DNA of 63,883 nucleotides, filler included, from Octopus bimaculoides (GCF_001194135.2; 4 parts of 4 records of this genome joined end to end with filler, not necessarily neighbours in it); one strand, 5' to 3'. Positions 10,450-28,556 are shown, numbered from the whole stretch's first letter. Program-made: numbers and translations. The notes: generated by a model not told the origin, from the sequence alone.

Positions 10450-10486
<37 letters not shown>

Positions 10487-10566: not shown

Positions 10567-10603
<37 letters not shown>

Positions 10604-10793
10604 TGTGTATACATACATATGTATATATGTATACATATATATATTCATACATATATATACATACATACATATATATATATNNNNNNNNNNAAATATATAC
10701 GTACGCATACATGAATATATTTTTCTAATCAATTATTGATGCAATTTTTTTCATTTTCTTTTACATTCACAAGTAAATAAAATATTTAGCTTG

Positions 10794-11037
10794 TTATACT
10801 TCAGTAGCTTCAACCTCTGGCTCATCTTCTGAATTACCGTAAAGAACTGTAGAATTATTGTTTATCTTGTTCATTTCTGCATCACGTTCTTTGATAACAC
10901 TGTCCAGATCTAATTTGGAGTTGTCTGCTGGCATTGGAAATGCTGTGTCACCATCAAAGTTGTAAAGATTGTTTGGTACAGCATTGATATTTTTATGATA
11001 CATACCATCAAATTCATTGTTAGTGTCTGAATACAAA
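10794..11037 (-). CDS. Cadherin-related protein, terminal coding exon LYSDTNNEFDG...EDEPEVEATEV*
   Basis: Acceptor cttgcttcttgtattattatAG, phase 2 matches the upstream exon; 80 codons then TAA; ends in T-E-V (class I PDZ-type motif). Confidence 0.85.
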
Positions 11038-11216
11038 CTATAATAATACAAGAAGCAAGATGAAAATATGTTAATAAATTAAAACCACAAATGTCATACT
11101 TCTCAAACATGTGCATGCACACACACACACATACATATGTATATATATATAATTGACAGAATGTGATTAAAAAATCCAAGGCTGTGAATAGTTTTCAGAA
11201 CATTTATAAAGAGAAG

Positions 11217-11264
11217 GTCTTACAGCTGTTTCCAGGATATTTTATATATCCCTTCATCAGAGAC
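11217..11264 (-). ncRNA. Minimal type I hammerhead ribozyme (PLE-type)
   Basis: gtct CTGATGA a gggata-tataaaa-tatcct g GAAAC agct GTA agac: stem I gtct/agac, intact core, palindromic stem III ACAGCTGT, GUA triplet. Confidence 0.8.
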
Positions 11265-11784
11265 GGTGTGAGAAAATGTTTGAGTAATAATTATTGTAGA
11301 GAAGATATGAAATACAATGGGAAGTGAAGGAATGAAAATAGAAGTGTGATACATAAGGGTATTGTATTTGCAGTTCCATTATTTAAGCAGAATGGTGTAT
11401 ATATAAGTTTCCTGTACCTTGTGTGCGAGTTCCAATGGTGTTTATATTTGGTCATTCCAAGCATAGAGTCTTGTAAACAGTGTTATTCGATCAAGGATTT
11501 TTTTTTTTTTTTTGGAGTGACTTAACAATTGGGAATGTGTTTATAAGGTAAAAATCAAAAACAGGAAGAGAACAGGAGGAAATAGAAGAAAAAAGGTTGG
11601 GAAATACAACAAATAAGTAAAGAAAGTGAAGATGTGTTAGCTAGTGGTCAGGATAAATGAGAGAAGGAAGGGGGAGAGGTGAGGGGGAGAGAGAGGAAGA
11701 GATGAGAGGGTAAAGAGTAAAAGAGTGTGAGGTATGTGAACAGGAGTGGTGTTATAGAGCTGCATTAAAGGATGGATACTGAAA

Positions 11785-12224
11785 ATCATCATCATCACCA
11801 GCATCATCATCATTTAACGTTCGCTTTCCATGCTAGCATGGGTTGGACGATTTGACTGGGGACTGGCGAACCGGATGGCTACACCAGACTCCAATATGAT
11901 CTGGCAGAGTTTCTACAGCTGGATGCCCTTCTTAATGCCAACCACTCTGAGAGTGTAGTGGGTGCTTTTCACGTACCACCGACATGAGGGTCAGTCCAGC
12001 AGTACGGGCAACGGTCATGCTCAAATGGTGTTTTTTACGTGCCACCTGCACAGGAGTCAGTCCAATGCTTTGTTCACATGCCACCGGCACAAGCGCCAGT
12101 AAGGCGAAGCTGGAAACGATCGCACTCAAATGGTACTTTTTACGTGCCACTGGCATGGGAGCGAGACCACTGCTCTGGCAGTGATCCCGCTTGGATGGTG
12201 CTGTTAGTGCTCCACTGGCACGGG
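11785..12224 (-). mobile_element. RTE 3'UTR-derived repeat
   Basis: (CAT)n ttaacgttcgctttccatgctagcatgggttgg...; inverted homologue of 4560-4985. Confidence 0.85.
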
Positions 12225-12559
12225 TAGAGAGAAAGTAAGGGTAGGGTGATGAGTAAGTGGGAATTAGTTTTGGTAATAAATTTGAGGTGGAATGAAGAAT
12301 ATAAATAATAAAGAATATAAGTCAAGTTGCTATAAATAGACATGTGTGATAGGTGAGCAGGAGAAGGAAGAAAGAATTTATATCTTTCAAGATGTATATA
12401 TACATACATACACATGTATCCATTCACTTATATAGACATAAACATACATTAACACATATATATGCATACAAACCCTTCTATGTTCACACACATTCGTATC
12501 TATTTTTGTATATATAAATTTTTGCATATATAAATGCATGTATGCAGACTCACACATGT

Positions 12560-12960
12560 TACAGTGGCCATTCTGTGGAAATGTTGTGCTCCCCTTACAT
12601 GAGCATCCTACCTCTGTCCCGGGTGTGGGCCTACTTATTAAAATCGTTTTTACCCTAGGTGCACAGATAAAGGAAATTTTCAGGGTATGCTTATTGAATA
12701 TTTTGCTGAATTTATCTGTATGGGAGAAGTATCTATCAACTAAGCTAAGAAAAATCTTACCTACTTGGGTTTTAACATTTAAAGAGAAGGGCGGTATAAA
12801 CCACAATACTTTCTGGTGCCACTTTCACTTGAAGGGGTTAGGTTCTGGTGTGTAATTAATTATATCCTTGAAACTGCTAGCAGCCAGTGCCTCATTGTAG
12901 TGCAGGATGGCAGCATCAAAAATCTCTTTGCTTGAAGATAAGCTGGAGATTCTTCCGCTG
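12560..12960 (-). mobile_element. Penelope-like element, RT thumb/linker remnant
   Basis: LSSSKEIFDAAILHYNEAL; WFIPPFSLNVKTQVGKIFLSLVDRYF...IFNKHTLKISF; CSCK. Confidence 0.8.
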
Positions 12961-13719
12961 ACGACCTTTACCAGGTTCTAGCAAAAGAATCTCCAGCCCC
13001 AACATGACAGACATCTACCAAATAGACTGTTTCCCACCACCTCCAATATAAAGTCCCACACACACATTGTACCCTTATGCTGCATACACACATAAATCCC
13101 CCACAATCTTAACCAATACAGAAATAAAACACTCTAGCAAACATGGTAATGAATGCCTACACCCCTTGCAAAAGTTATACAAACAGTACCACTACAAACA
13201 TCCCATTTCCACATGAATATAAACCTGAAAGACACACACAATTTCCACAAACACTTAACGATAACTCTTTCTGACTTACAGCATGGCCAATCCAGTGGCA
13301 ATGTCTTGGTACAAAGGGACATAACTCTCGACTAAATCCCCTACTTTGTTCGTTTCATCACCTTTTCACAACAATCGCAAACTGGATGTGTCCTTTCACC
13401 TCCAACAATAGAGAACAGTTGCCATATTTCGTTACATATCGGCTACCTCTGGTGAGCATAGGGTTGTATGATTGGATTGTTACCTAACTCTCTGCCATAC
13501 CCCTGGCGAGAAACCAATTGGTAAGATCAGCCGTGATGGTTATATAATACTGTACACTTTGGATAATATAACCACTCTGTTGACAGATATACGAGTGCAT
13601 CTTTTTTCTGACTTATGGACTTTTAGATAACTTACGCATGATATATATATTTATATACAGATGTATATATGTTTATATATATATATATAAATACACACAC
13701 ACATATACATATCTGTGTA

Positions 13720-13855
13720 CAAGATAGGCTTCCCTACAGTTTCCACTAACCTGATGCTACTCACAAGGCATTGGTCAGCCTGTGACAGTAGTAGAAGACA
13801 CTTGCCAAAAGTATCATCCAGCAAGATCAGCCCTAAAGGCACATGGTAGCAAAGC
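13720..13855 (-). mobile_element. SINE family A fragment
   Basis: cacaaggcattggtcagcc..gtagaagacacttgccaa. Confidence 0.7.
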
Positions 13856-14105
13856 AATCACACAGCTACTGCTACACTTATTGCTGATTGATATAATCTA
13901 GTTATGCTACTATTTGTTTTATCTGTTCTAGAATGAAGGAAATTAACTTTACCTTAGTGATATTTGAACTCAGAACACTGATATACCAATTTAGTTCCAA
14001 TAAAACATTCAGCTTCCATCTGTTTTTACCCTTTATCTCATAATAAATTATGGCAAACTTTTTGCAACAAACTTTTCATTTTAAAATTTGTTTTGTAAAA
14101 CATAC

Positions 14106-14171
14106 CTCTCTTTGTCTGGTAAGGGACTACCCATGTCATTTTCATCGAAATTGTTGTATAATGGATTAATC
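14106..14171 (-). CDS. Cadherin-related protein, cytoplasmic exon INPLYNNFDENDMGSPLPDKE(S)
   Basis: Acceptor atttttcAG, donor GTatgt; 66 nt, phase 2 to 2; NPLY motif. Confidence 0.88.
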
Positions 14172-15382
14172 CTGAAAAATATTTATATAAAACACAAATT
14201 TTTTGAAAACTTTTGTTATTGATAAATAAATATGTTTTTTCAGAGTTTTACTTCACAAAAGATATATAAAAAAATTTCTGAGAAAATTCTTCTTCCTCTT
14301 ATGTCACTGGCAATGTAAACATATATTATTACATTATTGACAGCGTAAATAATATAAACATATAAAACTTTCTATTTGGATAATGCAAAATTAATGATAT
14401 GCACCTTGACATGGAGTTTCAAATTTTGAACAGTTATTTTTCCTCTGCTTTCTTAGAAATTGGTAGATGTATAAGAGAGAAGTTTTGTCTCAAAACACAC
14501 AACCTTAATTAGCAGCAAATTGCATGAAAAAATTCTATCTGCTATGAATACTCTTTGGATCCTTTTATTGAGGAATGAATTATTATGAAATCAGGACTTC
14601 TAAATGCAGACACTGATGCATGACTAGATAATTTAGAGTTGGATGCCTTTCTGTAAATAAGTACTCAACAGTGAAAGAGAAGTGGAACCTGTTACAAAGT
14701 TATGCTTTCTAAAAGGGACATATAATTGCTACAACAGATTTTGAGCAGACTTACAAATAGAAAGTTTGTTTTGGTAGAATATATCATCAGAGTATCAGAA
14801 TATATTAGGCACAAGCTTGGAATGCTCTGCAAAATTGCAGGCAGCTNNNNNNNNNNNNNNNNNNNNNNNNNNNNNNNNNNNNNNNNNNNNNNNNNNNNNN
14901 NNNNNNNNNNNNNNNNNNNNNNNNNNNNNNNNNNNNNNNNNNNNNNNNNNNNNNNNNNNNNNNNNNNNNNNNNNNNNNNNNNNNNNTCAGAGTTCAATAC
15001 AACTACAGTGATTACTGTCTTTGACACAAAGCTACAAATATGTAGCGGAGAGAACTCAGATTGTAGTCATGGAAGATATACAACAAAGCATTTTCTTTGA
15101 TGCTTCAAAAATTCTACTGATCCTTAATAACAAGTTTCTAATTTGGTTCAAAGCAAGAAAATTCAGGGATAGGGCAAGTGACTTAAAACAATACCAGTAC
15201 ATGACTGGTACTTTATCTTATCAATTCTGGACTGAGGAAATGTAAAGATTGGTTGTTGTCATAGTTATGGAACCAATTATAACCTACATGTAATTAAATA
15301 ATCAAACATTTATAAAAAATAATAGGAGTTAGAAAGGAGAGAGAAGGAGGAAAAGGGGAGCAAGAGAGAAAGAAAAACATAC

Positions 15383-15440
15383 TGTCCATCTGAAAACAAA
15401 TTGGTTCCAGGGAATGCATCTTCAGCTATTTCATCTGATG
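15383..15440 (-). CDS. Cadherin-related protein, cytoplasmic exon SDEIAEDAFPGTNLFSDG(Q)
   Basis: Acceptor atatcattgcAG, donor GTatgt; 58 nt, phase 1 to 2, the only open frame; PGTN motif as in the CDHR2 tail. Confidence 0.88.
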
Positions 15441-15732
15441 CTGCAATGATATAAATATTAAATAATGACCATAGTTTTCTTTGACAGATGAAATTCTTTC
15501 ATGCACTGAATACACAGACAAACACAATTTAGAATACATATACAAAATAGAAAGTGCAAAATTAAATTATTAAAAGAAATGCAAAAATGGATATGAAGTG
15601 ATGATCAGTCTAACTAGTTCAATTAAATTCAATGCATATATATAGATATATATATATATAATAAAAACAAATGTCCAAAGTATATATTAGCTGTAAAACA
15701 AATCAGTCAGTCAGTCTGTCTGTTTGTGTATA

Positions 15733-15930
15733 TACAGGGTGCATAAGGTATTTGAGAACATACCTTTTTTTGGTCATTGCTGCATTTTTTGCTGACTCCA
15801 TATAATCTTTGTTTCAGAAAATAATAATGGCAGATTCTCAGCTTACTCAAGAAATGAAGAGGCATGCTGTTATTGTGGTTATAAAGGCTGAACATAGTGA
15901 TTTAGAAATATCTCATTGCTTTTTCTGGTT
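15733..15930 (+). mobile_element. maT-like transposon 5' end
   Basis: TAcagggtg terminus; MADSQLTQEMKRHAVIVVIKAEHSDLEIS N-terminus. Confidence 0.6.
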
Positions 15931-16334
15931 ACATTCGTTTTACTTGTCCCACAGCTTTTTGATATCATCACTTGTTACTTGTTCATTTTCCCTGTCACTC
16001 CTGCCTTGTTGCTTAGCAGTTATCTCTTCTTTCTTCCCTAAATAGATACTAGCTAGTCCTAACTGGGAATTATGCTTGGTAGAGGGATCATTTTATGTAA
16101 CTGACATCATTGTAATTTGTTTCTTAATTTTAATGTCAATCTGAAAATAATTAATAATTTAAGAAAAGGATTGCATCTTTTGTCAGGCAAAAACTAATTG
16201 ATTACAACCATATCTTTATCTTTTATATTTTGCTTGTTACAGTCATTAAACTGCAGCCATGCTGAGGTACTGCCTTGAAGAATTTTTTTAGCTGAATGAA
16301 TTGACCCTAGATTTTTTTTTTTTGTACTTACTCT

Positions 16335-16562
16335 GTCAGTGCTTTTACCAAACCATTAAATTACGGGGACGTAAACAGATACACAATGACACACACACAT
16401 ATATGACAGGTATCTTTCAGTTTCTGACTAACCAAATACACTCACAAGGCTTTGGTTGGCCTGAGGCTATAGTAGAAGACACTTGCCCAAGGTGCCCTGC
16501 AGTGGGAATGAACCTGGAACCCTGTAGTTGGGAACCAAGCTCCTTTACCTCACAGCCATGTC
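16335..16562 (-). mobile_element. SINE family A, 5' half
   Basis: cacaaggctttggttggcc..agtagaagacacttgcccaaggtgcc..cagtggga; CpG-depleted. Confidence 0.8.
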
Positions 16563-16841
16563 TATCTGTTTTTGTGGTAAGGAAAAGTACAAAAAATGTT
16601 TTTCATGCTCTTACTGAGTGAGAGATGGCTAATTTGCTAGCTGACTCCATCATTGATTAATATTGTTCTTTAAAGCTCCTTGCATTAAATACATTATCAC
16701 TAACTTAACTACTTTGTTTTCCTAGTGGTTAGCATCTCTGAATTATTTATTAAGTAAGGAATTTTTTATCTTCATATGCTAACCACAGGGCCAACCATTG
16801 TGCAATTTTCTTAGTGATTATTTAATTGCTACTTCAACAAG

Positions 16842-17690
16842 CAGGGCTGGCCTTAGGAAGTGCAGGACCCAATTGGGAACAATGTTGGTGGGCCCCAATT
16901 TCCCAGTCAACTTGCACCAAGGTATCCAGCTGTTAAAACCATGGTCCCGTATGGTGCCACATAAAAACACACAGTCCACACCATAAAGCAGTGGCATTAG
17001 GAAGGACATCCAGCTAAACCAAATGGGTGCCAGACATTGTCCCTGGATTGTCAGCCCCTGTCAAACCATTCAACCCATGCCAGCATGGAAAACAGACGTT
17101 AAATGATGATGACAATGATGATATGCATATATATATATATACATATTATGTATATATTTATATGTATGTATATATATATATGTGTNNNNNNNNNNNNNNN
17201 NNNNNNNNNNNNNNNNNNNNNNNNNNNNNNNNNNNNNNNNNNNNNNNNNNNNNNNNNNNNNNNNNNNNNNNNNNNNNNNNNNNNNNNNNNNNNNNNNNNN
17301 NNNNNNNNNNNNNNNNNNNNNNNNNNNNNNNNNNNNNNNNNNNNNNNNNNNNNNNNNNNNNNNNNNNNNNNNNNNNNNNNNNNNNNNNNNNNNNNNNNNN
17401 NNNNNNNNNNNNNNNNNNNNNNNNNNNNNNNNNATATATACAGGGGTTGGACAAAATAATAGAAACATCTAGCATCATAGCACCATAATTTTTAAATATC
17501 TATAAAACCATCACAAGCTTGTTTATTTTTAAATCCAGTATGTTTTTTCTTTCTTTTTTGAAAGAACATGTAAATTTTTTAAGACTTCAGGGAGACCACC
17601 TTTATGAAATGTTGCAGCATAGAATGTGGTCCCCCTGAGCACAGGGCCTGATTGGGAGCAATTGCTCCAGTTGGCTTAAGGTCAGCCCTG
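16842..17690. mobile_element. hAT-type MITE with nested insertions
   Basis: TIRs cagggctggccttag / cttaaggtcagccctg; 8-bp TSD tcaacaag/tcaacaat; contains an RTE tail, a microsatellite and a Tc1-like end (cagggGttggacaaaataat). Confidence 0.75.
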
Positions 17691-17977
17691 TCAACAATTA
17701 CATCGAGGCTTGCTTTGCCGATGAGATTAGAATAACTCCACATGATAGTTATATACAACTCTACATTGATCTCATTAGTCTTTGGGAGAGAAGTTAAAGA
17801 TTATGGATGCTGGCCTGCTTTTCTAGAATATAATACATAAAAAAAAAATTTTGAAAGCCAGTGTAAGTTAAAAACCATATCCCACAAATACAGGACATCT
17901 CAAAGGTCAACTTTGCAACCAAAAAGTTGACACTGCATTCATTCCAAACCAAAGATATAGACATTAAAACAACTTAC

Positions 17978-18018
17978 GATTTGTAGTGGTTTTAGCTGCT
18001 CTTAATTTCCTGGTATAT
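17978..18018 (-). CDS. Cadherin-related protein, cytoplasmic exon YTRKLRAAKTTTN(P)
   Basis: Strong acceptor tttttttcccatttctcttcAG and donor GTaagt; 41 nt, phase 2 to 1, the only open frame; resembles CDHR2 YNRKLQAMK. Confidence 0.9.
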
Positions 18019-18267
18019 CTGAAGAGAAATGGGAAAAAAAGCAATGAACAGACAAATAAATATATCATTGAGAGAGAGAGAAAGAGAGAGAGAGGAAGGA
18101 ATATTTTAGTGGAGATGCTTATATTTTCCAACAATAAATGTAGATGTGCATACGAACGTAAGGTACATGGCATACTATAATCTTTGTATTTGTCAGGATG
18201 GCAATCTTTTAGCTTTAATTTCTAAATGTACATGCTTTAAATGGTAAACTAGTTTACCATTTAATGT

Positions 18268-18510
18268 ATGGTAGACAAATGTAAGAAATCAACCACAGCA
18301 TACATTGGTGTGACAGTCAGAATTTTACCAGAGCAAACAGAAGTACATTGGAGTAGATACCATATTGAGAAATGTACATTGTTACTCAATCTACATACCA
18401 ATGATAAACATAATAGCATGCTCAACAACACTCATGTTGAAGTCATTTCACTACATCCATATGACTCTTCATTTCAACAGATACAGGAGTTTATTCAAAT
18501 AAATGAATAG
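18268..18510 (+). mobile_element. PLE GIY-YIG endonuclease remnant (type 1)
   Basis: CKKSTTAYIGVTVRIL resembles the YIG motif with an upstream Cys; decayed. Confidence 0.5.
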
Positions 18511-18579
18511 AAACCAATAAGAAGAATGCTGGTAGAATGGATAGACCGCATCACCACTTGGGACTTAGGCTTGGAGCTG

Positions 18580-18925
18580 TTACCAAGGTTGTTTAATGCC
18601 CTTAAGGTATTTGAACATGCAGCTAATCTTATGCATACAGGAAAGGCGAAGGTCTAGTTTATTATTTAATAAATTTTCACTATTAGATCTTAAAATTTCA
18701 AACAGTTCCATGAAGTAAAGTTTGCATCCACATCTATCGTTTAAGTATGGTTTTATGTCCCAACTTAAATCAAATTTAACATCGTCATTTTTGAGATCCC
18801 AGATCTTCATGGCTACAGACGTCTTGCCAGTCCTGCATCTTAATTTAAAAGATGAATAGTGGTTGTGTAAGCACTCCTTAAAATTTACAGTGCAGCCAAT
18901 ATAAGTGTAAGTATTGGTCGCTGTA
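18580..18925 (-). mobile_element. PLE GIY-YIG endonuclease remnant (type 2)
   Basis: TYIGCTVNFKECLHNHYSSF...IWDLK...SWDIKPY...CGCKL...LLN..SCMH. Confidence 0.8.
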
Positions 18926-19330
18926 GTATATATATATTGGTTAGTTGTCCATAAGTTAGAAGTAGAGGTGTCCAACAGTAACAGTAACAAAAGGAAACAT
19001 ACACAAAAATATGTTGGAGCAATAGAGGTTCCTTTAAAGCCAAGGTTAAATAATCATAGTTCCTCTTTTAGGATCCCAGAGATGTGCAATGTAACAGTAT
19101 TACCCAGCAACATACGGCGATTAAAAAAAGAGAGAATGCCATACAAAATTAACTGGAAGCTGCTTGAACAATCAGGACCATACCTCAATGGAAGCAGATA
19201 CTGCAAACTTGCCGTGGCAGAGAGGAAAATGACTAAAAAATTCGCATGACCTAGAAGTCTTCTTGAATTCATATAGTGATGTTTTTAGCTGATGCCCTCA
19301 TGACAGAAAATTTGCTTTGGAAATGTGGTC
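18914..19330 (+). mobile_element. PLE GIY-YIG endonuclease remnant (type 3)
   Basis: KYVGAIEVPLKPRLNNHSSSF...YKINWKLL...PYLNGSRYCKL..AE. Confidence 0.8.
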
Positions 19331-19893: not shown

Positions 19894-20107
19894 NNNNNNN
19901 NNNNNNNNNNNNNNNNNNNNNNNNNNNNNNNNNNNNNNNNNNNNNNNNNNNNNNNNNNNNNNNNNNNNNNNNNNNNNNNNNNNNNNNNNNNNNNNNNNNN
20001 NNNNNNNNNNNNNNNNNNNNNNNNNNNNNNNNNNNNNNNNNNNNNNNNNNNNNNNNNNNNNNNNNNNNNNNNNNNNNNNNNNNNTATATATATATATATA
20101 TATATCC

Positions 20108-20310
20108 TAATCATCATCATTTAAAGTCTGTTGTCCATGCTAGCAAGGGTTGGACTGTTTAACCAGGACTTGTAAGCTGAGGGGCTGTACCAGACTCCAG
20201 TCTGATTTGGCATGGCTTCTACTGCTGGATGCTCTTCCTAACACCAATCACTCTGAGAGTGTAATGGGTGTTTTTGCATGCCATCAACATGGGTGTTAGT
20301 TATATGACAT
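20108..20310 (-). mobile_element. RTE 3'UTR-derived repeat
   Basis: (CAT)n tttaa..ccatgctagcaagggttgg...gctggatgctcttcctaacaccaa. Confidence 0.8.
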
Positions 20311-20319
20311 TGAGCTCAC

Positions 20320-20560
20320 CAAAAGTCATTAGTCCCACAAGATACTATATTGGGCCCACTTCTCTTCTTTATTTACATCAATGACATTATTTACATCATC
20401 AAACATGACAGCATTTGAACTTTTGCAGATGACTCTAAGCTTCTGAAGGTCATCGACAGGAGAGGGGATCAAGCAAAAATCCAATCAGACTTGCTCATTG
20501 TTATCCAATAGATAGAAAAACACAATATGCAGCTACAAGCAGATCATCTGTGCATGCTGT
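20320..20560 (+). mobile_element. CR1/L2-type LINE RT fragment
   Basis: TILGPLLFFIYINDI...FADDSKL...QSDL. Confidence 0.85.
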
Positions 20561-21024
20561 TCACCTTGGAATGACAGAAATGTTTTTCTTGGATCTGAGA
20601 GACTACCATTAATTAATAAACATCCAACTATCTTATGGTTTTCAAAATAACTACAGAATATCCGTGGGTACTGTTGCTAGTAATGCTTCTCTTTTATCAG
20701 CTCTTTAAAATGTGTTAATAAAAAAGGTAACAAAAAGAAGGAAAAAGATTAATGTAAATTTTAAACTATTGAAATAACAACATAGCAACAGAAAATTGTT
20801 TCGTTTTGCTTATTTTATAAAAACAAAAACACCTCCATTGAGTGATCCAAATCAGTTGACAACATGTATCCTACTTAAACATCATCACTGTTGCATCCAT
20901 AACTTCATCATGTTTATCAATGCCAATTTTGTCACACTTACCTATCTTTCATAGAATCTATTTTGGGGTGACACATGACATTTCAATATTCTGTAATCTT
21001 TTTAACTCTTATAATAACAACCCA

Positions 21025-21250
21025 CATGAGACTGCCCCTGGTTCTATGATATAAACTTCCTGTTAAAAATAATCTAAATTAAATCTTCCATTGTTAAACA
21101 CCACTTTAATTACTTTAAACTTCCTGTTTAAAGTAATCTAAATTAAATCATTCATGTTAAACACCACTTTAATGATAAAGTTATTTTTCTAAATTCTTTG
21201 TTAAGTTCAAACTTAATTGAAACAAAGGCCATTGTATTTCAACAGAAATA
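21025..21250 (+). mobile_element. AT-rich interspersed repeat with an internal ~60-bp tandem duplication
   Basis: aaacttcctgtt.aa.taatctaaattaaatc..catgttaaacaccactttaat twice; related copy at ~57130-57320. Confidence 0.6.
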
Positions 21251-22232
21251 AGTTAAGAAAAGGCTTAAACATTATTTTAAAATATGAATGTCTTGTGGAT
21301 CATAATTCTCTCTGTTTCAAATTTTGTCAATGCAATCTCATTAGCTGCAACCAAGGCATACTACCTGAATGCATAACTTACTGTTTCTGGAACTTCACTA
21401 TATCTTGAACACTATCATTCAAATGTTATACAATGTCTTGAGAGTCTGCACAAATAAAGTGAGCTTGTCAGTAAGCAGTCCAAGGTTTTTGTTGACCTGT
21501 AAGGATATAGCTTGACCCTGCCTGAGATTTGAAACCAAATCTACCTGCTTGTTGCTTGTCAAAACGATAGGGAAATCCTCTCCACACCAGATGACTGATG
21601 AAGAAACACTCGAACCCCTAGGACTTGGGCTGGACAAGGAAAAGTCAGTCTTTTGTTTAAGGTTTGACCTACATTACTGACCATAGTCTATATAACAAAG
21701 AAAATCTCCTATATCTTCCTCTTTTGTGTCAGCCAGACCAAGGAGCAACACACTCTTTTGCATCAGCCATACAAGAGCAGCACTTTCCTTGGCCACAAGA
21801 AAGACGATGCCACCTCTATCCTTTCTTCCTTTCTAGTCAGCACTGTGCATTCCTTACTCTTTCACTCTCTACTGACTGACAACCTTTTTCTATACTATCA
21901 ACTACTAACTGGCGAGCCAACCTTGTCATCATCACTAGAATTGCTACTGTCTCTTTAAGTACCTGTTGGGAAAACGAATAAACATATGTAAAGAATATTT
22001 CAGCCTTTTTGGTGTTTATTCTTAATCTGACGCAAGTATCTTGAAGCATTACATCGACATGCTACATTTGGTAGACGGCTACATTCCAACCCAAAGCATA
22101 ACATTAGCCGCTAAAGACCCAACCGAAGAGGGGCACAACACACGCATGTTATTGCTTAAAAGTACTAATGTGTATAAGATATGTGAACCAATTTAAAAAA
22201 AAAATAAAATTCATTTCTATATTTAAGAGTTG

Positions 22233-22868
22233 AGGTGTCTTGTGGAAATTTAGAACCTGGGTTCTCATTCCTAAGGTATTTTTCGATGTTAATATTATTA
22301 TTATTCAGCTCACTGCTTGGAATCGAACTCGGAATCTTGGGGTACTAACCCCAGGATTCCAAGTTCTTAACCACTATGCCATATTCCCATGGGCATTTAT
22401 GGAGTGAATTTTAGGGCTTATAAATCTAATATTTTCGTATCATTCCTTAATACCAGTTCCCACATGCTACTCATATCTGCACTCGGTCTACTTAGGAGAT
22501 TGTTGTGTCCTAGCATATGTGCTGCTTCTTTTAATTTTCGTATTTTCCAGCGGTGACCTATGTCTATTATTTTAACTTCATCCCACAGGGGCAGGTGGTC
22601 TCCATTTTTCCACACATCATCAGCTACCCCCAATTTATCAATATCTCCTCGTGTCACAGCTTTGCGATGTTCGTTTAACCTTATTTTGAGGGGGTGTCAT
22701 TGTTTTGCCTTTGTATAACCTACCACAGCTCAATGGGATGGAGTAAATACAGTCTTTGGTCATATTCTCTTCTATTGGTGGTTTTACTCAAAGGAGATAT
22801 TTACGAAGTGTTGTATTACTCTTGAATCTTTTCGGAGAGGCCTTTCACATAGGGTAGACAGACTGTGG
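22233..22868 (-). mobile_element. Penelope-like element 3' region, inverted arm
   Basis: STVCLPYVKGLSEKIQ, GIY-YIG C-half ...LPLWDEVKIID..HRWKIRKLKEAAHM; mirror of 22869-23487. Confidence 0.9.
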
Positions 22869-23350
22869 ATACAAAAGATATGCGGCCCATATGACATCAG
22901 GACAACATTCAAGAGTAATACAACACTTCATAAATATCTCCTTTGAGTAAAACCACCAATAGAAGAGAATACGACCAAAGACTGAGTGTACTCCATCCCA
23001 CTGAGCTGTGGTAGGTTATACAAAGGCAAAACATGCCACCCCCTCAAAATAAGGGTAGATGAACATCGCAAAACTGTGACATGAGGAGATATTGATAAAT
23101 CGGGTGTAGGTGATGATGTATGGAAAAATGGAGACCACCTCCCCCTGTGGGATGAAGTTAAGATAATAGACAGAGAACACCAAAGGAAAATACAAAAACT
23201 AAAAGAAGCAGCACATATGCTAGGACACAACAACCTTCTAAGTAGACTGAGTGCAGATATGAGTAGCATGTGGGAACCGGTATTAAGGAAGGATAGGAAA
23301 ATATTAGATTTATAAGCCCTAAAATTCACTCCATAATTGCCACAAGAATA

Positions 23351-23399
23351 TGGCGTAGTGGTTAAGAGCTACTAACCTGAAGATTCCCAATTCGATTCC
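23351..23399 (+). promoter_or_regulatory. tRNA-like Pol III A-box/B-box within the PLE 3' region
   Basis: A-box TGGCGTAGTGG; B-box (a)TTCGATTCC, and GAGTTCGATTCC in the inverted arm at 22319-22330. Confidence 0.6.
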
Positions 23400-23480
23400 A
23401 AGGAGTGACCTGAATAATAATAATAATAATAACATCAAAAAATACCTTAGGAATGAGAACCAGGTTCTAAATTTCCCCAA

Positions 23481-23526
23481 GACACCTGATGAAGGTTGGA
23501 GGGTATATCAGCTGAAACGTTGTTAA
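23481..23526 (+). ncRNA. Minimal hammerhead ribozyme, stem I partly degenerate
   Basis: gacac CTGATGA a ggttg-gagggtatat-cagct GAAAC GTT gtt; palindromic AACGTT stem III. Confidence 0.7.
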
Positions 23527-23845
23527 CAACAAACAAGATGAGGACAAATATCCGTCAAATGTAAATAATGTAAAAATAAAATTATACTCCAATTTTGAAT
23601 TAACAGCTTCTCAAATAAATTCGTACTCCCTTCCACAATATTACAATTCACTTGGAAAGTCGTCCTAAATGTCAATGTTACAAAACTTGTTAGTAATATT
23701 TTACCTCATCTATGAATGTATTTTAACTTTCATTTCAGAACACAAAAGTTTCTTTGAATTGAAATTATTCCATATGAAATTTTCAAAAGTTTATATCTAG
23801 TAAATATTTTTTTAAAATTAGTTCATCAGTTTAAGAACTACCAAC

Positions 23846-23970
23846 CTGCGATTACTTGCATAAAATAGAATCATCGTAATGGTCAATATGAAAACCAACA
23901 CCACAATGACCGTAATAAAAACTATGAAATTCTTCTCCTTGTTGTCAACAGTTACAAATGGTTCAGATTC
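23846..23970 (-). CDS. Cadherin-related protein, transmembrane exon ESEPFVTVDNKEKNFIVFITVIVVLVFILTITMILFYASNR(R)
   Basis: Acceptor tttcttgctcttctAG, donor GTtggt; 125 nt, phase 0 to 2; ~23-residue hydrophobic helix followed by basic residues. Confidence 0.9.
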
Positions 23971-24059
23971 CTAGAAGAGCAAGAAATATCAATCAACAAT
24001 GATTTTTACAGAAAAATAAACATAAACATAAAAATCACATAAGAATGACATCAATAATT

Positions 24060-24260
24060 AAATAATAATTTCCAACTGAGGCAATTTGTTGGATGGGGAT
24101 TAGTTAATTAAACTGATCCTTGTACTTCATTGGTACTTTATTTCATTGCTTCTGGAGGGATGAACAGCAAAGATTTGACTTCAGAATGTAAAGAACCAAT
24201 GCAAACACCACAAGGATTTTGTCTCTGACACTGTAATGATTTTGACAATCAACTGCCCTA
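24060..24260 (-). mobile_element. tRNA-derived SINE family B, decayed
   Basis: tggtactttatttcattg..ggatgaa..gcaaag..tttgacttcagaa, inverted family B core. Confidence 0.65.
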
Positions 24261-24513
24261 ACAATAACAACAGAGGCAACAACAACAAAAACAACAACCA
24301 CAATCTATAAAAATTGTAACTGTGGTAATTGGTGCATTAGAGACGGTGTATAGATAAAGAAGGTTGGAATGGAATCTCCTGTAGAGCTTCTATAGAAAAT
24401 TTGACTCCTAGGAGCAGGGAAGATTATCAAAGGGGTTTTGAGCATTTAATGATTTATCATAAATTCTCCCAGGAATAAGATTAATCCTGAATCAAAACAA
24501 CAACAACAACAAC

Positions 24514-24567
<54 letters not shown>

Positions 24568-26072
24568 CATTTAACATTTGCTTTCCATGCTGGCATGGGT
24601 TGGATGGTTTGACAAAAATCTGGTAAGTTGGGGGGGGGGGCTGCACTAGGTCCCAGTCTGATATAGTAAGGTTTCTATGGTTGGTGCCCTTCCCAATGTC
24701 AACCACTTCAAAAGTGTAGCGGGTGGTTTTTTATGTGCCAATGATCTGACACTGGCATCAGCCATGACTACGGTCTCACTTGGCTTGACAGGTCTACACA
24801 AGCATGGTATATCATCACCAAAGGTCTTAGTCACCTGTCGCTGCTTCCATGAGGCATAATGCTCAAATGGTGCTTTTTACATGCCACCAACATGGGTGCC
24901 AGTCAGATGGCACAGGCATTGGCCACAACTAAGATTTCACTCGGTTTGACAGGTCTTCACAAGTACAGCATATCGCCCAACGATTGAAGGTGCTTTTAAT
25001 GAGCCAGTTATGTGCCACTGGCATGGGTACTGGTCAGACAGCACTGGCATTGACCATGACTACAATTTCGTTCGGTTTGACAGGACTTCACAAGCAAAGC
25101 ATATAGCCCAATGATTGAAGGGTTCTTTCAATGGGTCACTTACACAACATTGGCAGTGACAACGATTCCGATATCACTTGGCTTGATGGGTCTTCTCAAG
25201 CATGACATATCTCCAAAGGTCTCGGTCACTTGTCATTGTCTCTGTGAGGACCAACATTCGATGATCGTGCTTCACCACCTCACCCCATGTCTTCCTGGGT
25301 CTACCTCTTCCACAGGTTCCCTCTACTGTCCTCATCCATGTGCATCACATGACCATACCAGTGCAGTCATCTCTCTTGCACACCATATCTGATGCTTCTT
25401 ATGTCCAAATTTTCTCTTAGGATGCTTACACTCTGTTGTGGATGCACACTGACATTACACATCAAGCAGAGCATGCTAGCTTCATTTCTTTTTAGCATGG
25501 CTGTTCGCAAATATGTGTCATACAGACTGCCTTTCACTCCAAGTGAGAAGTCCTTTGTTACCAGCAGCTCTTTGTTATCAGGAGCTCTCTGAACTTTGCC
25601 CAGCCTTCTCTTATTTTAGCAGCTATGCTTTCAGAGAATCCACCTGAACTACTGACTTGGTCACCTAGGTAACAGAAGCTATCAACTTCTTGTAATTTTT
25701 CCCCTGGAATGTGATGGAATCTATTTTCTGTACATTTTTGGTGTTTATTGTACCTGCACACCTTCCACACACAAAAACTATTTTCCCTGTTAACCTTCCT
25801 CTAATATTGCTAAACCTCTTATGTAGCCCTAGCTTACACAGCAGACACCTTTTGGAGTTTCTCTCTATGCCTTTTCTACTGGCCAAGCAGGACCATATAC
25901 CTGAAGGAATTTATGATTTGTCTGCCTTCCTACTTAGTAAGACTTTGATTTTTGCTAGGTTAACTCTAATGCACTTTGATTCTAGACGTTGCTTCCACAC
26001 CTGAATCTTCTTCTCTAGTTCTGGTAGTGATTCAGCTATTAGAGAAAGGTCATCAGAATAGAGGAGCTCCCA
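24568..26072 (-). mobile_element. 5'-truncated RTE LINE: RT C-terminus contiguous with a ~700-bp subrepeated 3'UTR and tail
   Basis: WELLYSDDLSLIAESLPELEKKIQVWK..., VDSFCYLGDQVSSSGG, WYGHVM, RGRPRKTW, then the UTR repeat. Confidence 0.9.
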
Positions 26073-26131
<59 letters not shown>

Positions 26132-26135
<4 letters not shown>

Positions 26136-26255
26136 GAAAGTATTAAATAGCTGAAAAGACTGAACAGCATGATACTGTAGGCTGCAGGTAGTAAGCCTGC
26201 TATGCATGCAAGACTCCAGAAGCTCCAACAAAACCTGTGATAAAGAGATAATAGC

Positions 26256-26256
<1 letters not shown>
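26132..26256 (+). mobile_element. Very short 3' end of an R4/Dong-like LINE flanked by (TAA)n
   Basis: RKVLNS* followed by a UTR similar to 61975-62060 (gtagtaa..cc..cta). Confidence 0.5.
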
Positions 26257-26315
<59 letters not shown>

Positions 26316-26319
<4 letters not shown>

Positions 26320-26720
26320 TAGAAATTAGAAAAATGTGGAATCTGAAGACGAAAACAATACCTATTGTCATAGGTGCCCTGGGAATGACAGCGAAACGGG
26401 CTGATTACTACCTAGCTCAGATACCAGGAAACCCCAAAATGGCTGAAGTTCAAAAGATAGTGCTCATGGGAACTGCCCATATCCTACGTAAAATACTGTC
26501 TATGTGATCTCAAATTTTAAAGCAAACACATAATTTTCTTATGGTTTCTTAAACATTCACTTGAACAAAACTGTACAAATCCAAATATATGGTACCCTAG
26601 GCATAACACCTACATGAACTTCTAACTTGTTGTCTCTTGAGGTCTCTGGGTGAGACTTGGATCCAACTTGTACAAATGCAAAACAAAAGTCAAACATAAA
26701 ATAATAATAATAATAATAAA
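26316..26720 (+). mobile_element. R4/Dong-like (restriction-like endonuclease) LINE 3' end
   Basis: KIEIRKMWNLKTKTIPIVIGALG...VQKIVLMGTAHILRKILSM*; 3'UTR ending in (TAA)n. Confidence 0.88.
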
Positions 26721-26721
26721 T

Positions 26722-27336
26722 ACACTGATGCAGTACCAAGCAGTGGCTCTCATGGCTTCTGATCTAAACTGATTGGAAGTGTTATCATGTACATTGTTTT
26801 GTCTTGGTATAAATGATGGACTACAGCAAATATTCTGCTCAATACCACAGATTTGCTTGTCAATTGTTTGACCATAACTAGTTGAGCATGTCCCTTAGTG
26901 GCTGACGATATGTGCATCTCTGATCACAAGCAGAAGTAGTTGGGGAGCATCATAGGTATGTGTTGAGAGGAATTCTTTGGGGTTTGAATAGGATATGGGC
27001 AGTTCCCATGAGCACTATCTTTTGAACTTCAGCCATGGGGTTTGAATAATTCACCTCTGGAAACAAGGATGTTTCCTTCATCATCCTTAAAAAAACCTTA
27101 TTCTGGAACCTTTTGAATGGAATGGGCTACTTGACCAGAAAAAAATTCTAACTGGGCCCCATATGTAAGGTCAGGCACTGTTTATCTTGATAAAAGATCA
27201 GCATGTCGTGCACATATGGCTGTGATGCATGTGCCTGGTGTATCTTTATGAGATGGGTAGTTATGATGGGTATACTAGAGCTCATATATTTTACCCTAGT
27301 GCCACTTTGATGACATGCACTGCTCTCTTGCTCAGT
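26722..27336 (+). mobile_element. Family D (TAA)n-embedded element, copy 1 (interrupted by a short duplication)
   Basis: c.ctgatgcagtacca.gc ... gcactgctctc; homologous to 34040 and 54418. Confidence 0.85.
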
Positions 27337-27337
27337 G

Positions 27338-27388
<51 letters not shown>

Positions 27389-27406
27389 TTAATAATAATA
27401 ATAAAT

Positions 27407-27450
<44 letters not shown>

Positions 27451-27514
27451 TAATAATAATAATAAATGATAATAATAATAATAAATGATAATAATAATAA
27501 TAATAAATAATAAT

Positions 27515-27726
27515 TCTTTCTACTGGAAGCACATAGCCTCAAATTTGGGGGAAGGGATTAAGTCGATTACATCGACTCCAGTGCATAACTGGTGCTTATT
27601 TAATCAAACCTGAAAGGATGAAAAGCAAAATCGTCCTCGGTGGAATTTGAACTCAGAACATAATGGCAGATGAAATACTGCTAAATATTTCACCTGGCAA
27701 GCTAACTTTTCTGCCAGCTTGGTGCC

Positions 27727-27728
<2 letters not shown>
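27515..27728 (-). mobile_element. SINE family B within (TAA)n
   Basis: gagctggcagaa..ttagc..gttctgagttcaaattcc..gcttttcatcctttc..taagcacca. Confidence 0.85.
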
Positions 27729-27804
<76 letters not shown>

Positions 27805-27861
27805 GTAGTAGTACTAGTAGTAGTAGTAGTAGTAGTAGCAGCGGCGGCGGCGGCGGCGATG

Positions 27862-27935
<74 letters not shown>

Positions 27936-27945
27936 AAGAAGAGTG
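27729..27945. repeat. Compound trinucleotide tract (TAA)-(TAG)-(GCG)-(GGT)-(TAG)-(AAG)
   Basis: Directly visible. Confidence 0.95.
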
Positions 27946-28109
27946 AAGGAGGAGGGGGACAATACAAAACAGGCATAAGGGGTTTACATATAAGGGAATG
28001 TTAAAAAAAATAGGTAAAGGAAAAGTATGCAAGGTATACATTAAAAGAAGGGAAGTATACATAGTATATAGCACTAAGAAGAAGAAGAAAGAATAATAAA
28101 AAAAATCAT

Positions 28110-28400
28110 AGTGATGGAGTCCTCTTGATACAGGTGGGCCTCTTGGGATAATAATGGAATCTCACCATCTAAGATCACCCTGAATACCAAGGACAAGTAA
28201 TCTTTCCAATTCCTTTCCTCCAGTTCACAAGTCTAAACTTTGAGCAGTACCATCCACTCTTGCCATTTTCACAACTTTTGATAAATTTACTCGAGGACAG
28301 CAGCTCCCTCTCCACCCTCATTTTCTTTTTCAAGTGAAACTTGAAAAAGTCGATGAGGGTTTTACCAAAGAAGAATGTCTCTGTCTTCATTCCTTTCAAC
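28110..28400 (-). mobile_element. Tx1/L1-like LINE 3' end
   Basis: KGMKTETFF.GKTLIDFFKFHLKKKMRVERELLSS; related to 62345-62830. Confidence 0.65.
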
Positions 28401-28489
28401 CACGTTTACCAGACAACCTCTTTCACCACTTTTACAAGAGGAACACAAAACATTTACCATTCAAAATCTGAAATCAAACAGTTTCCTAC

Positions 28490-28556
28490 CTTAACTCTTT
28501 CTACTGCAAAATTTTCAAACTTCTCTGCATTTAAAACTCTTTTCATATCAAGGATT
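28490..28556 (-). CDS. Cadherin-related protein, juxtamembrane exon (x)ILDMKRVLNAEKFENFAVERVK
   Basis: Acceptor ttttcattaatatatAG, donor GTagga; 67 nt, phase 2 to 0; joins in frame to the TM exon. Confidence 0.75.

What the first reader, a model, noticed from the sequence alone, without database searches (positions are those of the whole stretch)
10794..28556. Hidden six-exon 3' end of a CDHR2/CDH23-type cadherin with NPLY and a PDZ-binding tail
Seen: six minus-strand GT-AG exons splice in consistent phases (2-0-2-1-2-2) into ILDMK...TM...RRYTRKLRAAK...FPGTNLFSDGQINPLY...EVEATEV*. The ORF track misses five of them. Known: the human CDHR2 tail has YNRKL..PGTN..NP and ends TTDL; CDH23 ends ITEL; both bind harmonin PDZ domains in microvillar or stereociliary links. 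Inference: a cephalopod member of that link system, possibly in rhabdomeric microvilli, statocyst hair cells or gut.
Basis: partly seen in the sequence, partly recalled or inferred. Interest (0 to 1): 0.7.

Follow-up and report, generated by a model that had tools for sequence, protein, structure and literature searches.

The report
Last six exons of octopus cadherin-23-like gene
The six small minus-strand exons are real and encode the membrane-adjacent end, the membrane anchor and the cytoplasmic tail of a cadherin-23/CDHR2-type adhesion protein of an octopus, which is a correct but fairly ordinary gene-annotation result.

Summary
Six minus-strand exons (28556-28490, 23970-23846, 18018-17978, 15440-15383, 14171-14106, 11037-10794) have canonical AG/GT sites and intron phases 2-0-2-1-2-2. 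They splice into the 199-aa peptide ILDMK...EVEATEV*. The three N gaps lie in introns and hide no coding sequence.

The peptide is 82% identical, without gaps, to the C-terminus of Octopus sinensis LOC115232682. The whole window is collinear with that locus, introns included, and all six exons and their splice sites are conserved there.

The cadherin assignment is supported, but not by the tail. The O. sinensis ortholog aligns with mouse cadherin-23 EC27-MAD28 (PDB 8TRI, E 9e-14), and that alignment runs through the window's first exon. [quoted passage not shown] Argonauta, Lingula and Lottia relatives carry 7 to 12 or more cadherin repeats and the same tail motifs: RKLxAA, PGTN, NPx[Y/F], a short helix and a C-terminal T-[D/E]-[V/I].

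The tail evolves fast (dN/dS about 1) but keeps its reading frame. Verdict: a new member of a known kind, of modest interest.

The parts
28490..28556 (-). Exon A (67 nt, enters in phase 2). It encodes (x)ILDMKRVLNAEKFENFAVERVK, the end of the last helix and the last beta-strand of the membrane-adjacent domain (MAD).
   Evidence: Acceptor and donor. Matches O. sinensis P0010 residues 201-223. The equivalent P0002 residues 201-222 align with mouse CDH23 MAD28 residues 430-451 and lie in helix 196-216 and strand 219-224 of the model. Exon and AG/GT are conserved in L001 42873-42939.
23846..23970 (-). Transmembrane exon (125 nt, phase 0 in, phase 2 out). It encodes the stalk ESEPFVTVDNKEKN, the TM helix FIVFITVIVVLVFILTITMILFY (23928-23860) and the start of the basic stop-transfer ASNR(R).
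   Evidence: 90% identical to P0010 residues 224-265. The model of the ortholog has a helix at 233-276.
17978..18018 (-). Exon 3 (41 nt). It encodes the juxtamembrane basic motif (R)YTRKLRAAKTTTN; RKLxAA is invariant from octopus to Lingula and Lottia.
15383..15440 (-). Exon 4 (58 nt). It encodes (P)SDEIAEDAFPGTNLFSDG(Q); the PGTN motif (15411-15400) is invariant in all relatives.
14106..14171 (-). Exon 5 (66 nt). It encodes (Q)INPLYNNFDENDMGSPLPDKE; the NPLY motif (14167-14156) is an NPx[Y/F] motif, seen as NPLF in Lingula and NPIY in Lottia.
10794..11037 (-). Terminal coding exon (244 nt including the TAA stop at 10796-10794). It encodes an acidic, Asn-rich disordered tail, the conserved helix motif DLDSVIKERDAEMN (10910-10869) and the C-terminal class I PDZ-binding motif A-T-E-V (10808-10797).
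   Evidence: A low-confidence helix is predicted at 360-381 of the ortholog. T at -2 and V/I at 0 are invariant in 6 of 6 relatives.

Best explanation
The window holds the last six coding exons of a large, multi-exon cadherin-related gene of an octopod. It is orthologous to Octopus sinensis LOC115232682 and O. bimaculoides LOC106877917. The gene belongs to the cadherin-23/CDHR2 (Cr-2) type, in which a ferredoxin-like membrane-adjacent domain sits directly on a single transmembrane helix.

Shown here: the exons encode the C-terminal helix and strand of that domain, a short stalk, the transmembrane helix, a basic juxtamembrane stretch, and a roughly 140-residue acidic, mostly disordered tail. 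The tail carries four short sequence islands conserved across lophotrochozoans (RKLxAA, PGTN, NPx[Y/F], and a short amphipathic helix D-L-x-x-[VA]-[IL]-x-E-[RH]-[DE]-A). It ends in a class I PDZ-binding C-terminus, T-[D/E]-[V/I].

Inferred, not shown: the ectodomain, encoded upstream of the window, forms a filamentous Ca2+-dependent link between membranes of actin-based protrusions. The tail anchors that link to the actin core by docking a PDZ scaffold (a harmonin-like protein) on the C-terminus. A PTB/FERM-type domain, such as a class VII myosin tail, may dock on the NPxY motif. This would mirror what CDH23 and CDHR2 do in stereocilia and brush-border microvilli.
For: Exon structure:
- Canonical splice sites and consistent phases.
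- Each exon hits the orthologous proteins on its own.
- Gap-free 82% identity to O. sinensis P0010 residues 202-400.

Orthology of the locus:
- The window is collinear with O. sinensis CM016860.1 (L001) through introns and the 3' flank, at 82-90% nucleotide identity.
- All six exons and their AG/GT dinucleotides are conserved, with no indel in 601 nt. Well-aligned flanking introns show about 1.5 gap events per 100 nt.

A cadherin, not a small protein:
- O. sinensis has ...KELLK|ILDKNRV... running straight into exon A.
- Argonauta P0005 has 7 Pfam Cadherin stretches plus a weak PCDH15_12th (MAD) match just before the tail.
- Cadherin exons lie upstream of the NCBI model's start in L001.

Cr-2 type:
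- P0002 residues 3-222 align with mouse CDH23 EC27-MAD28, E 8.7e-14.
- The last 485 ectodomain residues of Lingula P0006 are collinear with 8TRI residues 3-452 at 165 bits. PCDH15 EC9-MAD12 reaches only 74-94 bits.
- Lingula EC1-2 aligns in register with CDH23 and CDHR2 EC1-2.
[quoted passage not shown] Foldseek ranks 8TRI first (2.5e-15), then PCDH15 MAD12 and Nup54.

Tail:
- The motifs and the T-x-[VI] C-terminus are invariant in octopus, Argonauta, Lingula and Lottia.
- CDH23 ends in the PDZ-binding motif ITEL, and CDH23, CDHR2 and CDHR5 tails bind harmonin (PMC2928128; PMC5493754; PMC10916864).
Against: - No cadherin repeat lies inside the window, so the family assignment rests on orthologs.
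- The octopus tail found no vertebrate protein at E<1e-3 among 1.84 billion representatives. Pfam and PDB searches with the tail gave nothing.
- Between the window and O. sinensis the 199 codons give dN 0.082, dS 0.078 and omega about 1.05 (37 nonsynonymous against 9 synonymous differences). Exon nucleotide identity (92.3%) is no higher than in the best-aligned flanking introns. Most of the tail is therefore under little amino-acid constraint.
- Removing ITEL did not weaken CDH23-harmonin binding in vitro (PMC2928128), so a PDZ-binding motif alone does not prove the anchoring mechanism.
- Lingula and Lottia relatives have an ectodomain long enough for roughly 15 cadherin repeats, judged from length. 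That is neither the 27 of CDH23 nor the 9 of CDHR2.
- No expression data were available.
Confidence: 0.85

Rival explanations
1. A stand-alone small single-pass membrane protein of about 196 aa, starting at the ATG in exon A (MKRVLNAEKF...). NCBI models it this way in O. bimaculoides (LOC106877917, 191 aa). Alternatively, a short isoform made from an internal promoter in addition to the long cadherin.
For: P0001 starts MQTVLNAEKF, aligned exactly with M4 of the window peptide. The window also has Met at that position. Whether CDH23-type genes make short cytoplasmic isoforms rests on my own recollection and was not checked here.
Against: - O. sinensis has Lys, not Met, at that position (ILDKNRV), and its protein continues upstream through a full MAD.
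- Argonauta also continues upstream (FLDSRRL).
- A newer O. bimaculoides model (XP_052821843.1, P0003) already joins the same tail exons to cadherin repeats.
- Homology to O. sinensis begins exactly at the predicted acceptor.
Confidence: 0.07
2. A decaying or redundant duplicate copy: the exons are intact by chance but no longer under selection, that is, an incipient pseudogene.
For: - Omega is about 1.05 against O. sinensis, and exon substitution divergence is similar to that of the well-aligned flanking introns.
- O. sinensis has a second locus (L002) sharing 98%-identical 3' exons, so duplication occurs in this gene family.
Against: - No indel, stop codon or lost splice site in 601 nt in either species. 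About 9 indel events would be expected at the intronic rate.
- With O. bimaculoides as reference, the window lineage carries fewer changes (11) than the O. sinensis lineage (19).
- Substitutions avoid the motif islands, which are conserved as far as brachiopods.
- The window is the collinear counterpart of the chromosomal O. sinensis locus.
Confidence: 0.06
3. The tail belongs to a different cadherin subfamily, as the automatic names of relatives suggest (dachsous, protocadherin Fat 4-like), or to the PCDH15 side of the link pair.
For: - NCBI names: 'protein dachsous' (P0003) and 'protocadherin Fat 4-like' (P0005).
- Pfam's only MAD model is named after PCDH15 and hits P0005 and P0006 weakly.
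- The highest total PDB scores for the EC repeats go to CELSR1 and clustered protocadherins.
Against: - Those high scores are sums over many non-collinear repeats. The only collinear membrane-proximal match is CDH23 EC25-MAD28 (165 bits), against 74-94 bits for PCDH15.
- In FAT and CELSR the MAD is followed by EGF/LamG modules. Here it is followed directly by the transmembrane helix.
- Other automatic names point the other way: 'cadherin-related family member 2-like' (P0004) and 'cadherin-23' (P0006).
Confidence: 0.04

Closest known systems
Cadherin-23 (CDH23, otocadherin; upper tip-link cadherin, Cr-2 subfamily)
   Same: - The last EC repeat and the membrane-adjacent domain lie directly before a single transmembrane helix. 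This region is significantly similar in sequence to mouse CDH23 EC27-MAD28 and is the top structural match.
- The C-terminus is a class I PDZ-binding motif of the form x-T-E-[V/L] (ATEV here, ITEL in CDH23).
- The EC1-2 tip of the Lingula relative aligns in register with CDH23 EC1-2.
   Different: - The relatives with complete N-termini (Lingula 1903 aa, Lottia 1934 aa) have room for about 15 EC repeats rather than 27.
- No detectable sequence similarity of the cytoplasmic tail to any vertebrate protein.
- Orthology versus paralogy is not resolved, and the octopus N-terminus is unknown.
CDHR2 / protocadherin-24 (intermicrovillar adhesion complex of the brush border, Cr-2 subfamily)
   Same: - The same architecture class: EC repeats, MAD, TM, and a tail ending in a PDZ-binding motif that binds harmonin.
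- NCBI names one O. sinensis paralog 'cadherin-related family member 2-like'.
- Lingula EC1-2 aligns in register with CDHR2 EC1-2/3 at 76-87 bits.
   Different: - CDHR2 has 9 EC repeats.
- The in-register tip scores are lower than for CDH23 (100-110 bits).
- CDHR2 MAD10 has no solved structure to compare with.
Protocadherin-15 (PCDH15; its Drosophila counterpart Cad99C is named from my own knowledge and was not checked here)
   Same: It has a MAD next to the membrane, and the predicted fold of the ortholog matches PCDH15 EC11-MAD12 (Foldseek E about 1e-11). It belongs to the same functional world of links between actin protrusions.
   Different: Sequence similarity of the membrane-proximal region is much weaker than to CDH23. 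The MAD-plus-tail query found no PCDH15 chain at E<=10. The literature read here places CDHR5 in the Cr-3 subfamily and describes it as tip-similar to PCDH15, the binding partner of CDH23.
Predicted octopus proteins XP_036370891.1 / XP_029658562.1 (O. sinensis LOC115232682) and O. bimaculoides LOC106877917 / XP_052821843.1
   Same: They are direct orthologs: 82% and 73% amino-acid identity, the same six-exon structure, and collinear introns.
   Different: - Different species.
- The public models are fragmentary or misnamed: 'uncharacterized protein' of 400 aa and 191 aa, and 'protein dachsous' of 691 aa, which skips exon A, the transmembrane exon and exon 3.

Membership tests
Cadherin superfamily | Tandem extracellular cadherin (EC) repeats (Pfam PF00028) in the ectodomain | tested here: met
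   Met through orthologs, not inside the window, which starts after the repeats. P0004 (O. sinensis) has 2 PF00028 stretches, P0003 (O. bimaculoides) 2, P0005 (Argonauta) 7, Lingula 12 and Lottia 11. Cadherin-coding exons lie upstream in the collinear O. sinensis locus.
Cr-2 cadherins (CDH23 / CDHR2) | A ferredoxin-like membrane-adjacent domain (MAD) immediately before the single transmembrane helix | tested here: met
   - Exon A is the C-terminal end of this domain.
- P0002 residues 3-222 align with CDH23 EC27-MAD28, E 8.7e-14.
[quoted passage not shown]
- Foldseek ranks 8TRI, PCDH15 MAD12 and Nup54 first.
- The transmembrane exon follows directly.
Cr-2 cadherins (CDH23 / CDHR2) | An EC1-2 'tip' similar to CDH23 and CDHR2, which is the basis of the subfamily definition | tested here: inconclusive
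   Lingula P0006 EC1-2 aligns in register with CDH23 (100-110 bits) and CDHR2 (76-87 bits). No octopus N-terminus is known; all octopus and Argonauta models are 5'-truncated.
Cr-2 cadherins (CDH23 / CDHR2) | A C-terminal class I PDZ-binding motif (x-[S/T]-x-hydrophobic-COOH) | tested here: met
   The window ends A-T-E-V followed by the stop codon. Thr at -2, an acidic residue at -1 and V/I at 0 are conserved in octopus, Argonauta, Lingula and Lottia. CDH23 ends in ITEL.
Cr-2 cadherins (CDH23 / CDHR2) | Sequence homology of the cytoplasmic tail to vertebrate CDH23 or CDHR2 tails | tested here: inconclusive
   phmmer of P0001 against 1.84 billion representatives found no vertebrate hit at E<1e-3. 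No direct comparison was possible, because no vertebrate tail sequence could be retrieved.
Cr-2 cadherins (CDH23 / CDHR2) | The tail binds harmonin (USH1C) and is linked to a class VII myosin | not testable with these tools
   Known for CDH23 and CDHR2. For the octopus protein this is only an inference from the PDZ-binding motif.
CDH23 proper or CDHR2 proper (strict orthology) | 27 EC repeats + MAD28 (CDH23) or 9 EC repeats + MAD10 (CDHR2) | tested here: inconclusive
   Lingula and Lottia relatives with signal peptides are 1903 and 1934 aa, with the transmembrane helix near residue 1735. That leaves room for about 15 EC repeats plus a MAD, which fits neither. The number of repeats in octopus is unknown.
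PCDH15 / Cr-3 | MAD12-type membrane-proximal sequence | tested here: not met
   PCDH15 EC9-MAD12 scores 74-94 bits against 165 bits for CDH23 over the same collinear region. The MAD-plus-tail query found no PCDH15 chain at E<=10.
FAT / CELSR / Dachsous (names given to relatives by automatic annotation) | The MAD is followed by EGF/LamG modules (FAT, CELSR) or a 7TM domain (CELSR) | tested here: not met
   The MAD is followed after 14 residues by one transmembrane helix and the tail. Pfam finds no EGF, LamG or 7TM in P0002, P0005, P0006 or P0008.
Classical / type I-II cadherins | Catenin-binding cytoplasmic domain (Pfam Cadherin_C, PF01049) | tested here: not met
   No such Pfam hit for the 199-aa peptide even at E<=10, nor for any relative.

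The most novel reading that the evidence does not exclude
The lophotrochozoan proteins (octopus, Argonauta, Lottia, Lingula) may define a distinct, so far undescribed third Cr-2 cadherin with roughly 15 EC repeats plus a MAD. Its tail code would be RKLxAA - PGTN - NPx[Y/F] - helix - T[D/E][V/I]. On this reading the tail is the ancestral form of the CDHR2/CDH23 tail, so the cadherin-harmonin-myosin VII link machinery of microvilli would predate the split of protostomes and deuterostomes. In cephalopods it might serve rhabdomeric or statocyst microvilli. A related possibility comes from O. sinensis, where two loci have different ectodomain and transmembrane exons but 98%-identical exons 4-6. Tail exons may be shared or homogenised among paralogs.
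Probability: 0.2. Interest if true: 0.55.

Novelty: new member of a known kind. Interest (0 to 1): 0.3.

Why it matters
The result gives a correct gene structure for the 3' end of a cadherin-23/CDHR2-type gene that public octopus annotations represent only as fragments. Those fragments are labelled 'uncharacterized protein', 'protein dachsous' or 'CDHR2-like, partial'.

It also defines a short set of tail motifs conserved from brachiopod to octopus. These motifs are obvious candidates for docking PDZ and PTB/FERM proteins.

If the tail does recruit a harmonin/myosin-VII-type complex, the Usher and brush-border link machinery could be studied in cephalopod microvillar photoreceptors, statocysts or gut. 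As it stands, this is a solid annotation result rather than a surprise.

Tried and rejected
- Word-indexed protein search. Three searches were run: the peptide, a tail profile, and a MAD-plus-tail profile. They returned only short octopus or gastropod proteins. They missed sequences that were themselves in the query alignment (P0005, P0006, P0008). This index is therefore blind to C-terminal tails of long proteins, and its silence on vertebrate CDHR2 and CDH23 means nothing.
- Pfam on the 199-aa peptide gave only sub-threshold transmembrane-driven noise.
- PDB sequence searches with the peptide and with the tail profile found nothing relevant.
P0001 alone was used instead.
- Literature searches for the CDHR2 tail sequence found nothing (Cad87A+CDHR2, TTDL+harmonin). 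Pan et al. 2009 on the CDH23-harmonin complex is not held.
- No further exon lies in 28557-29098 or elsewhere in the window. In O. sinensis the next upstream exon is 2.3 kb 5' of exon A, which would fall beyond the window's end.
- The idea that M4 is the true start was considered and rejected; see the first rival.
- The idea that the N gaps hide exons was rejected, because the ortholog alignment is gap-free.
- The O. sinensis isoform difference LY versus YT at the junction of the transmembrane exon and exon 3 could not be derived from canonical alternative sites in the window or in L001.
- There are no tRNAs or Rfam families in the window.

Full report
**Observation**

I recovered the missing transmembrane exon by an exhaustive search for an AG...GT segment that opens in phase 0, closes in phase 2 and is hydrophobic. 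The six exons are:
- 28556-28490
- 23970-23846
- 18018-17978
- 15440-15383
- 14171-14106
- 11037-10794

Every acceptor is AG behind a pyrimidine/AT-rich tract. Every donor is GT, and three of them are GTAAGT or GTATGT. The phases are 2-0-2-1-2-2. The product is the 199-aa peptide ILDMKRVLNAEKFENFAVERVK|ESEPFVTVDNKEKNFIVFITVIVVLVFILTITMILFYASNR|RYTRKLRAAKTTTN|PSDEIAEDAFPGTNLFSDG|QINPLYNNFDENDMGSPLPDKE|SLYSD...EVEATEV*.

**Assembly gaps**

The three N runs inside the finding (14847-14986, 17186-17433, 19894-20084) all fall in introns of this model. The peptide aligns to the O. sinensis ortholog over 199 columns without a single gap. Each exon's tblastn match ends at the predicted boundary or within one to a few codons of it. 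No coding sequence is therefore hidden in a gap, and the frame is continuous across them.

**Relatives**

The word-indexed search found only one protein, O. bimaculoides LOC106877917. It is 191 aa, 73% identical, and starts at a Met aligned with M4 of the window peptide. This raised the possibility of a small stand-alone gene.

An exhaustive phmmer search of that protein against 1.84 billion representatives settled the matter. The tail is the C-terminus of longer proteins:

| Protein | Species | Length | Identity or E-value (to the octopus tail P0001) |
|---|---|---|---|
| P0002/P0010 | O. sinensis | 400 aa | 72% (82% to the window peptide) |
| P0004 | O. sinensis | 462 aa | 65% |
| P0003 | O. 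bimaculoides | 691 aa | 99% over the shared tail exons |
| P0005 | Argonauta hians | 1136 aa | 45% |
| P0006 | Lingula | 1903 aa | E about 1e-4 |
| P0008 | Lottia | 1934 aa | E about 1e-4 |

Pfam finds 2 to 12 cadherin domains in all of them except the 400-aa fragment. O. sinensis reads ...VVPPKELLK|ILDKNRVLNAERF..., so exon A continues upstream and M4 is not conserved as Met. The automatic names are inconsistent: 'uncharacterized', 'protein dachsous', 'cadherin-related family member 2-like', 'protocadherin Fat 4-like', 'cadherin-23'.

**Which cadherin**

- The O. sinensis fragment aligns over residues 3-222 with mouse cadherin-23 EC27-MAD28 (PDB 8TRI residues 233-451, E 8.7e-14). The alignment runs through the residues that correspond to the window's exon A (ILDKNRVLNAERFENFAVERV against MIDENKEQLRNLFRNYNVLDV).
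- The Lingula MAD is more similar still (E 4e-16).
- The last 485 ectodomain residues of Lingula are collinear with the whole of 8TRI at 165 bits. PCDH15 EC9-MAD12 reaches 74-94 bits.
- Lingula's EC1-2 aligns from its first mature residue with CDH23 EC1-2 (100-110 bits) and CDHR2 EC1-2/3 (76-87 bits).
[quoted passage not shown] Its alignment was shallow and its mean pLDDT is only 59, with the confident part confined to the MAD and the transmembrane helix.
- Foldseek puts CDH23 EC25-MAD28 first (2.5e-15), followed by PCDH15 EC11-MAD12 and the Nup54 ferredoxin-like domain. Nup54 is the known structural relative of MADs.
- According to the Sotomayor laboratory papers, CDH23 and PCDH24/CDHR2 form the Cr-2 subfamily and both carry a MAD next to the membrane. 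In FAT and CELSR the MAD is followed by EGF/LamG modules.

Among solved structures, CDH23 is the nearest.

**Synteny and selection**

The O. sinensis locus (L001, CM016860.1:86575730-86652389) is collinear with the window through introns and the 3' flank at 82-90% nucleotide identity. The window is thus the orthologous locus of another octopod.

- All six exons and every AG/GT are conserved, with no indel in 601 nt.
- Well-aligned flanking introns carry about 1.5 gap events per 100 nt, so roughly nine would be expected in the exons under neutrality.
- Substitutions, by contrast, look nearly neutral: 37 nonsynonymous and 9 synonymous differences, dN 0.082, dS 0.078. Exon identity (92.3%) is similar to that of the well-aligned intron flanks.
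- With O. bimaculoides as reference, the window lineage has fewer changes (11) than the O. sinensis lineage (19). This speaks against decay of this particular copy.
- The substitutions cluster in linkers and spare the motif islands.

This is the usual behaviour of a disordered tail built of short linear motifs. I record it as a real caveat.

Argonauta and O. bimaculoides cadherin repeats hit L001 upstream of the NCBI model's first codon, so that model is 5'-truncated. In O. sinensis the next exon upstream lies 2.3 kb 5' of exon A, which in the window would fall beyond position 29098. Accordingly, no further exon is found in 28557-29098.

**Anatomy of the encoded part and likely mechanism**

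Shown:
- the end of the MAD (exon A)
- a 14-residue stalk
- a 23-residue transmembrane helix
- a positive-inside stretch, NRRYTRKLRAAK
- a 140-residue tail with net charge -15, rich in Asn, Asp and Glu

Conserved from octopus to Lingula and Lottia:
- R-K-L-x-A-A
- P-G-T-N
- N-P-x-[Y/F]
- S-L
- D-L-x-x-[VA]-[IL]-x-E-[RH]-[DE]-A, predicted helical at low confidence
- the C-terminus T-[D/E]-[V/I]

Inferred: the C-terminus is a class I PDZ ligand. By analogy with CDH23 (ITEL) and CDHR2/CDHR5, it would dock a harmonin-like scaffold. The NPxY motif is of the kind read by PTB and FERM-F3 domains, which is general knowledge rather than something tested here. The helix might correspond to an internal scaffold-binding helix, which is speculation. 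Note that deletion of ITEL did not reduce CDH23-harmonin affinity in vitro, so the motif's presence does not prove the mechanism.

**Rivals**

- A stand-alone 196-aa protein is contradicted by the O. sinensis and Argonauta sequences and by the structural incompleteness of a MAD starting at M4.
- An incipient pseudogene is contradicted by frame, splice-site and motif conservation.
- A FAT, dachsous or PCDH15 affiliation is contradicted by the architecture and by collinear scores.

**Not established**

- Homology of the tail to any vertebrate tail.
- Strict orthology to CDH23 versus CDHR2.
- Expression, tissue and binding partners.

**Verdict**

The finding is real and its interpretation is essentially right. 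It is a new member of a known kind: the unannotated or poorly annotated 3' end of a Cr-2 cadherin. Its interest is moderate to low, lying mainly in the conserved lophotrochozoan tail motifs and in the poor state of the public octopus gene models.

Noticed in passing
window 22260-23461: A large palindrome lies inside the intron between the transmembrane exon and exon 3. Its arms, 22260-22833 and 22901-23461, are 87-96% complementary. Each arm carries ORF fragments with a GIY-YIG-like 'YSIPLSCGRLYKGKT' motif. It probably represents two head-to-head Penelope-like element fragments.
   Followed up: partly
window 89-301(+), 569-820(-), 18580-18990(-), 25911-26231(-): Transposon remnants occur in the introns and the 3' flank. 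They are: a mariner-like transposase C-terminus (LPHLPYSPDLAPTD), a LINE-type endonuclease N-terminus, a weak GIY-YIG hit (E 0.005) and a weak reverse-transcriptase hit (E 0.003). The first two gave no Pfam hit at E<=0.01.
   Followed up: partly
window 9693-10000 and 10473-10680; N gap 10681-10690: Long TG and AT microsatellites and a 10-N gap start about 105 nt 3' of the stop codon. The first ATTAAA is 437 nt and the first AATAAA 1125 nt after the stop, so the 3' UTR end is undefined.
   Followed up: no
L002 (O. sinensis VCDQ01000384.1) 22752-40507 versus L001 57699-76660: O. sinensis has a second locus, which encodes 'CDHR2-like, partial' P0004. Its exons 4-6 and 3' flank are 94-98% identical to LOC115232682. 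Its transmembrane exon is only about 85% identical, and its upstream part encodes different EC repeats joined to the transmembrane helix without a MAD. This could be a segmental duplication with conversion, a haplotig, or a chimeric scaffold.
   Followed up: partly
L001 788-1000 and 9881-10117: Cadherin-repeat coding sequence lies upstream of, and overlaps, the first codon of the NCBI model of O. sinensis LOC115232682, so that 400-aa model is 5'-truncated. The O. bimaculoides model XP_052821843.1 ('protein dachsous') skips exon A, the transmembrane exon and exon 3, and contains what looks like a non-cadherin insert.
   Followed up: partly
window 23846-23837 and 18018-18006; P0002 versus P0010 residues 266-267: O. 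sinensis isoforms X1 and X2 differ only by LY versus YT at the junction of the transmembrane exon and exon 3. O. bimaculoides has LY, and the window reads YT. The donor region has tandem GTs (AG|GTTG|GTAG). I could not derive the LY form from canonical sites.
   Followed up: partly
window 24891-25133: A 131-bp unit is repeated 1.8 times (81% match) inside the first intron. ORFs across 24646-25392 look like degenerate repeats of one short element.
   Followed up: no
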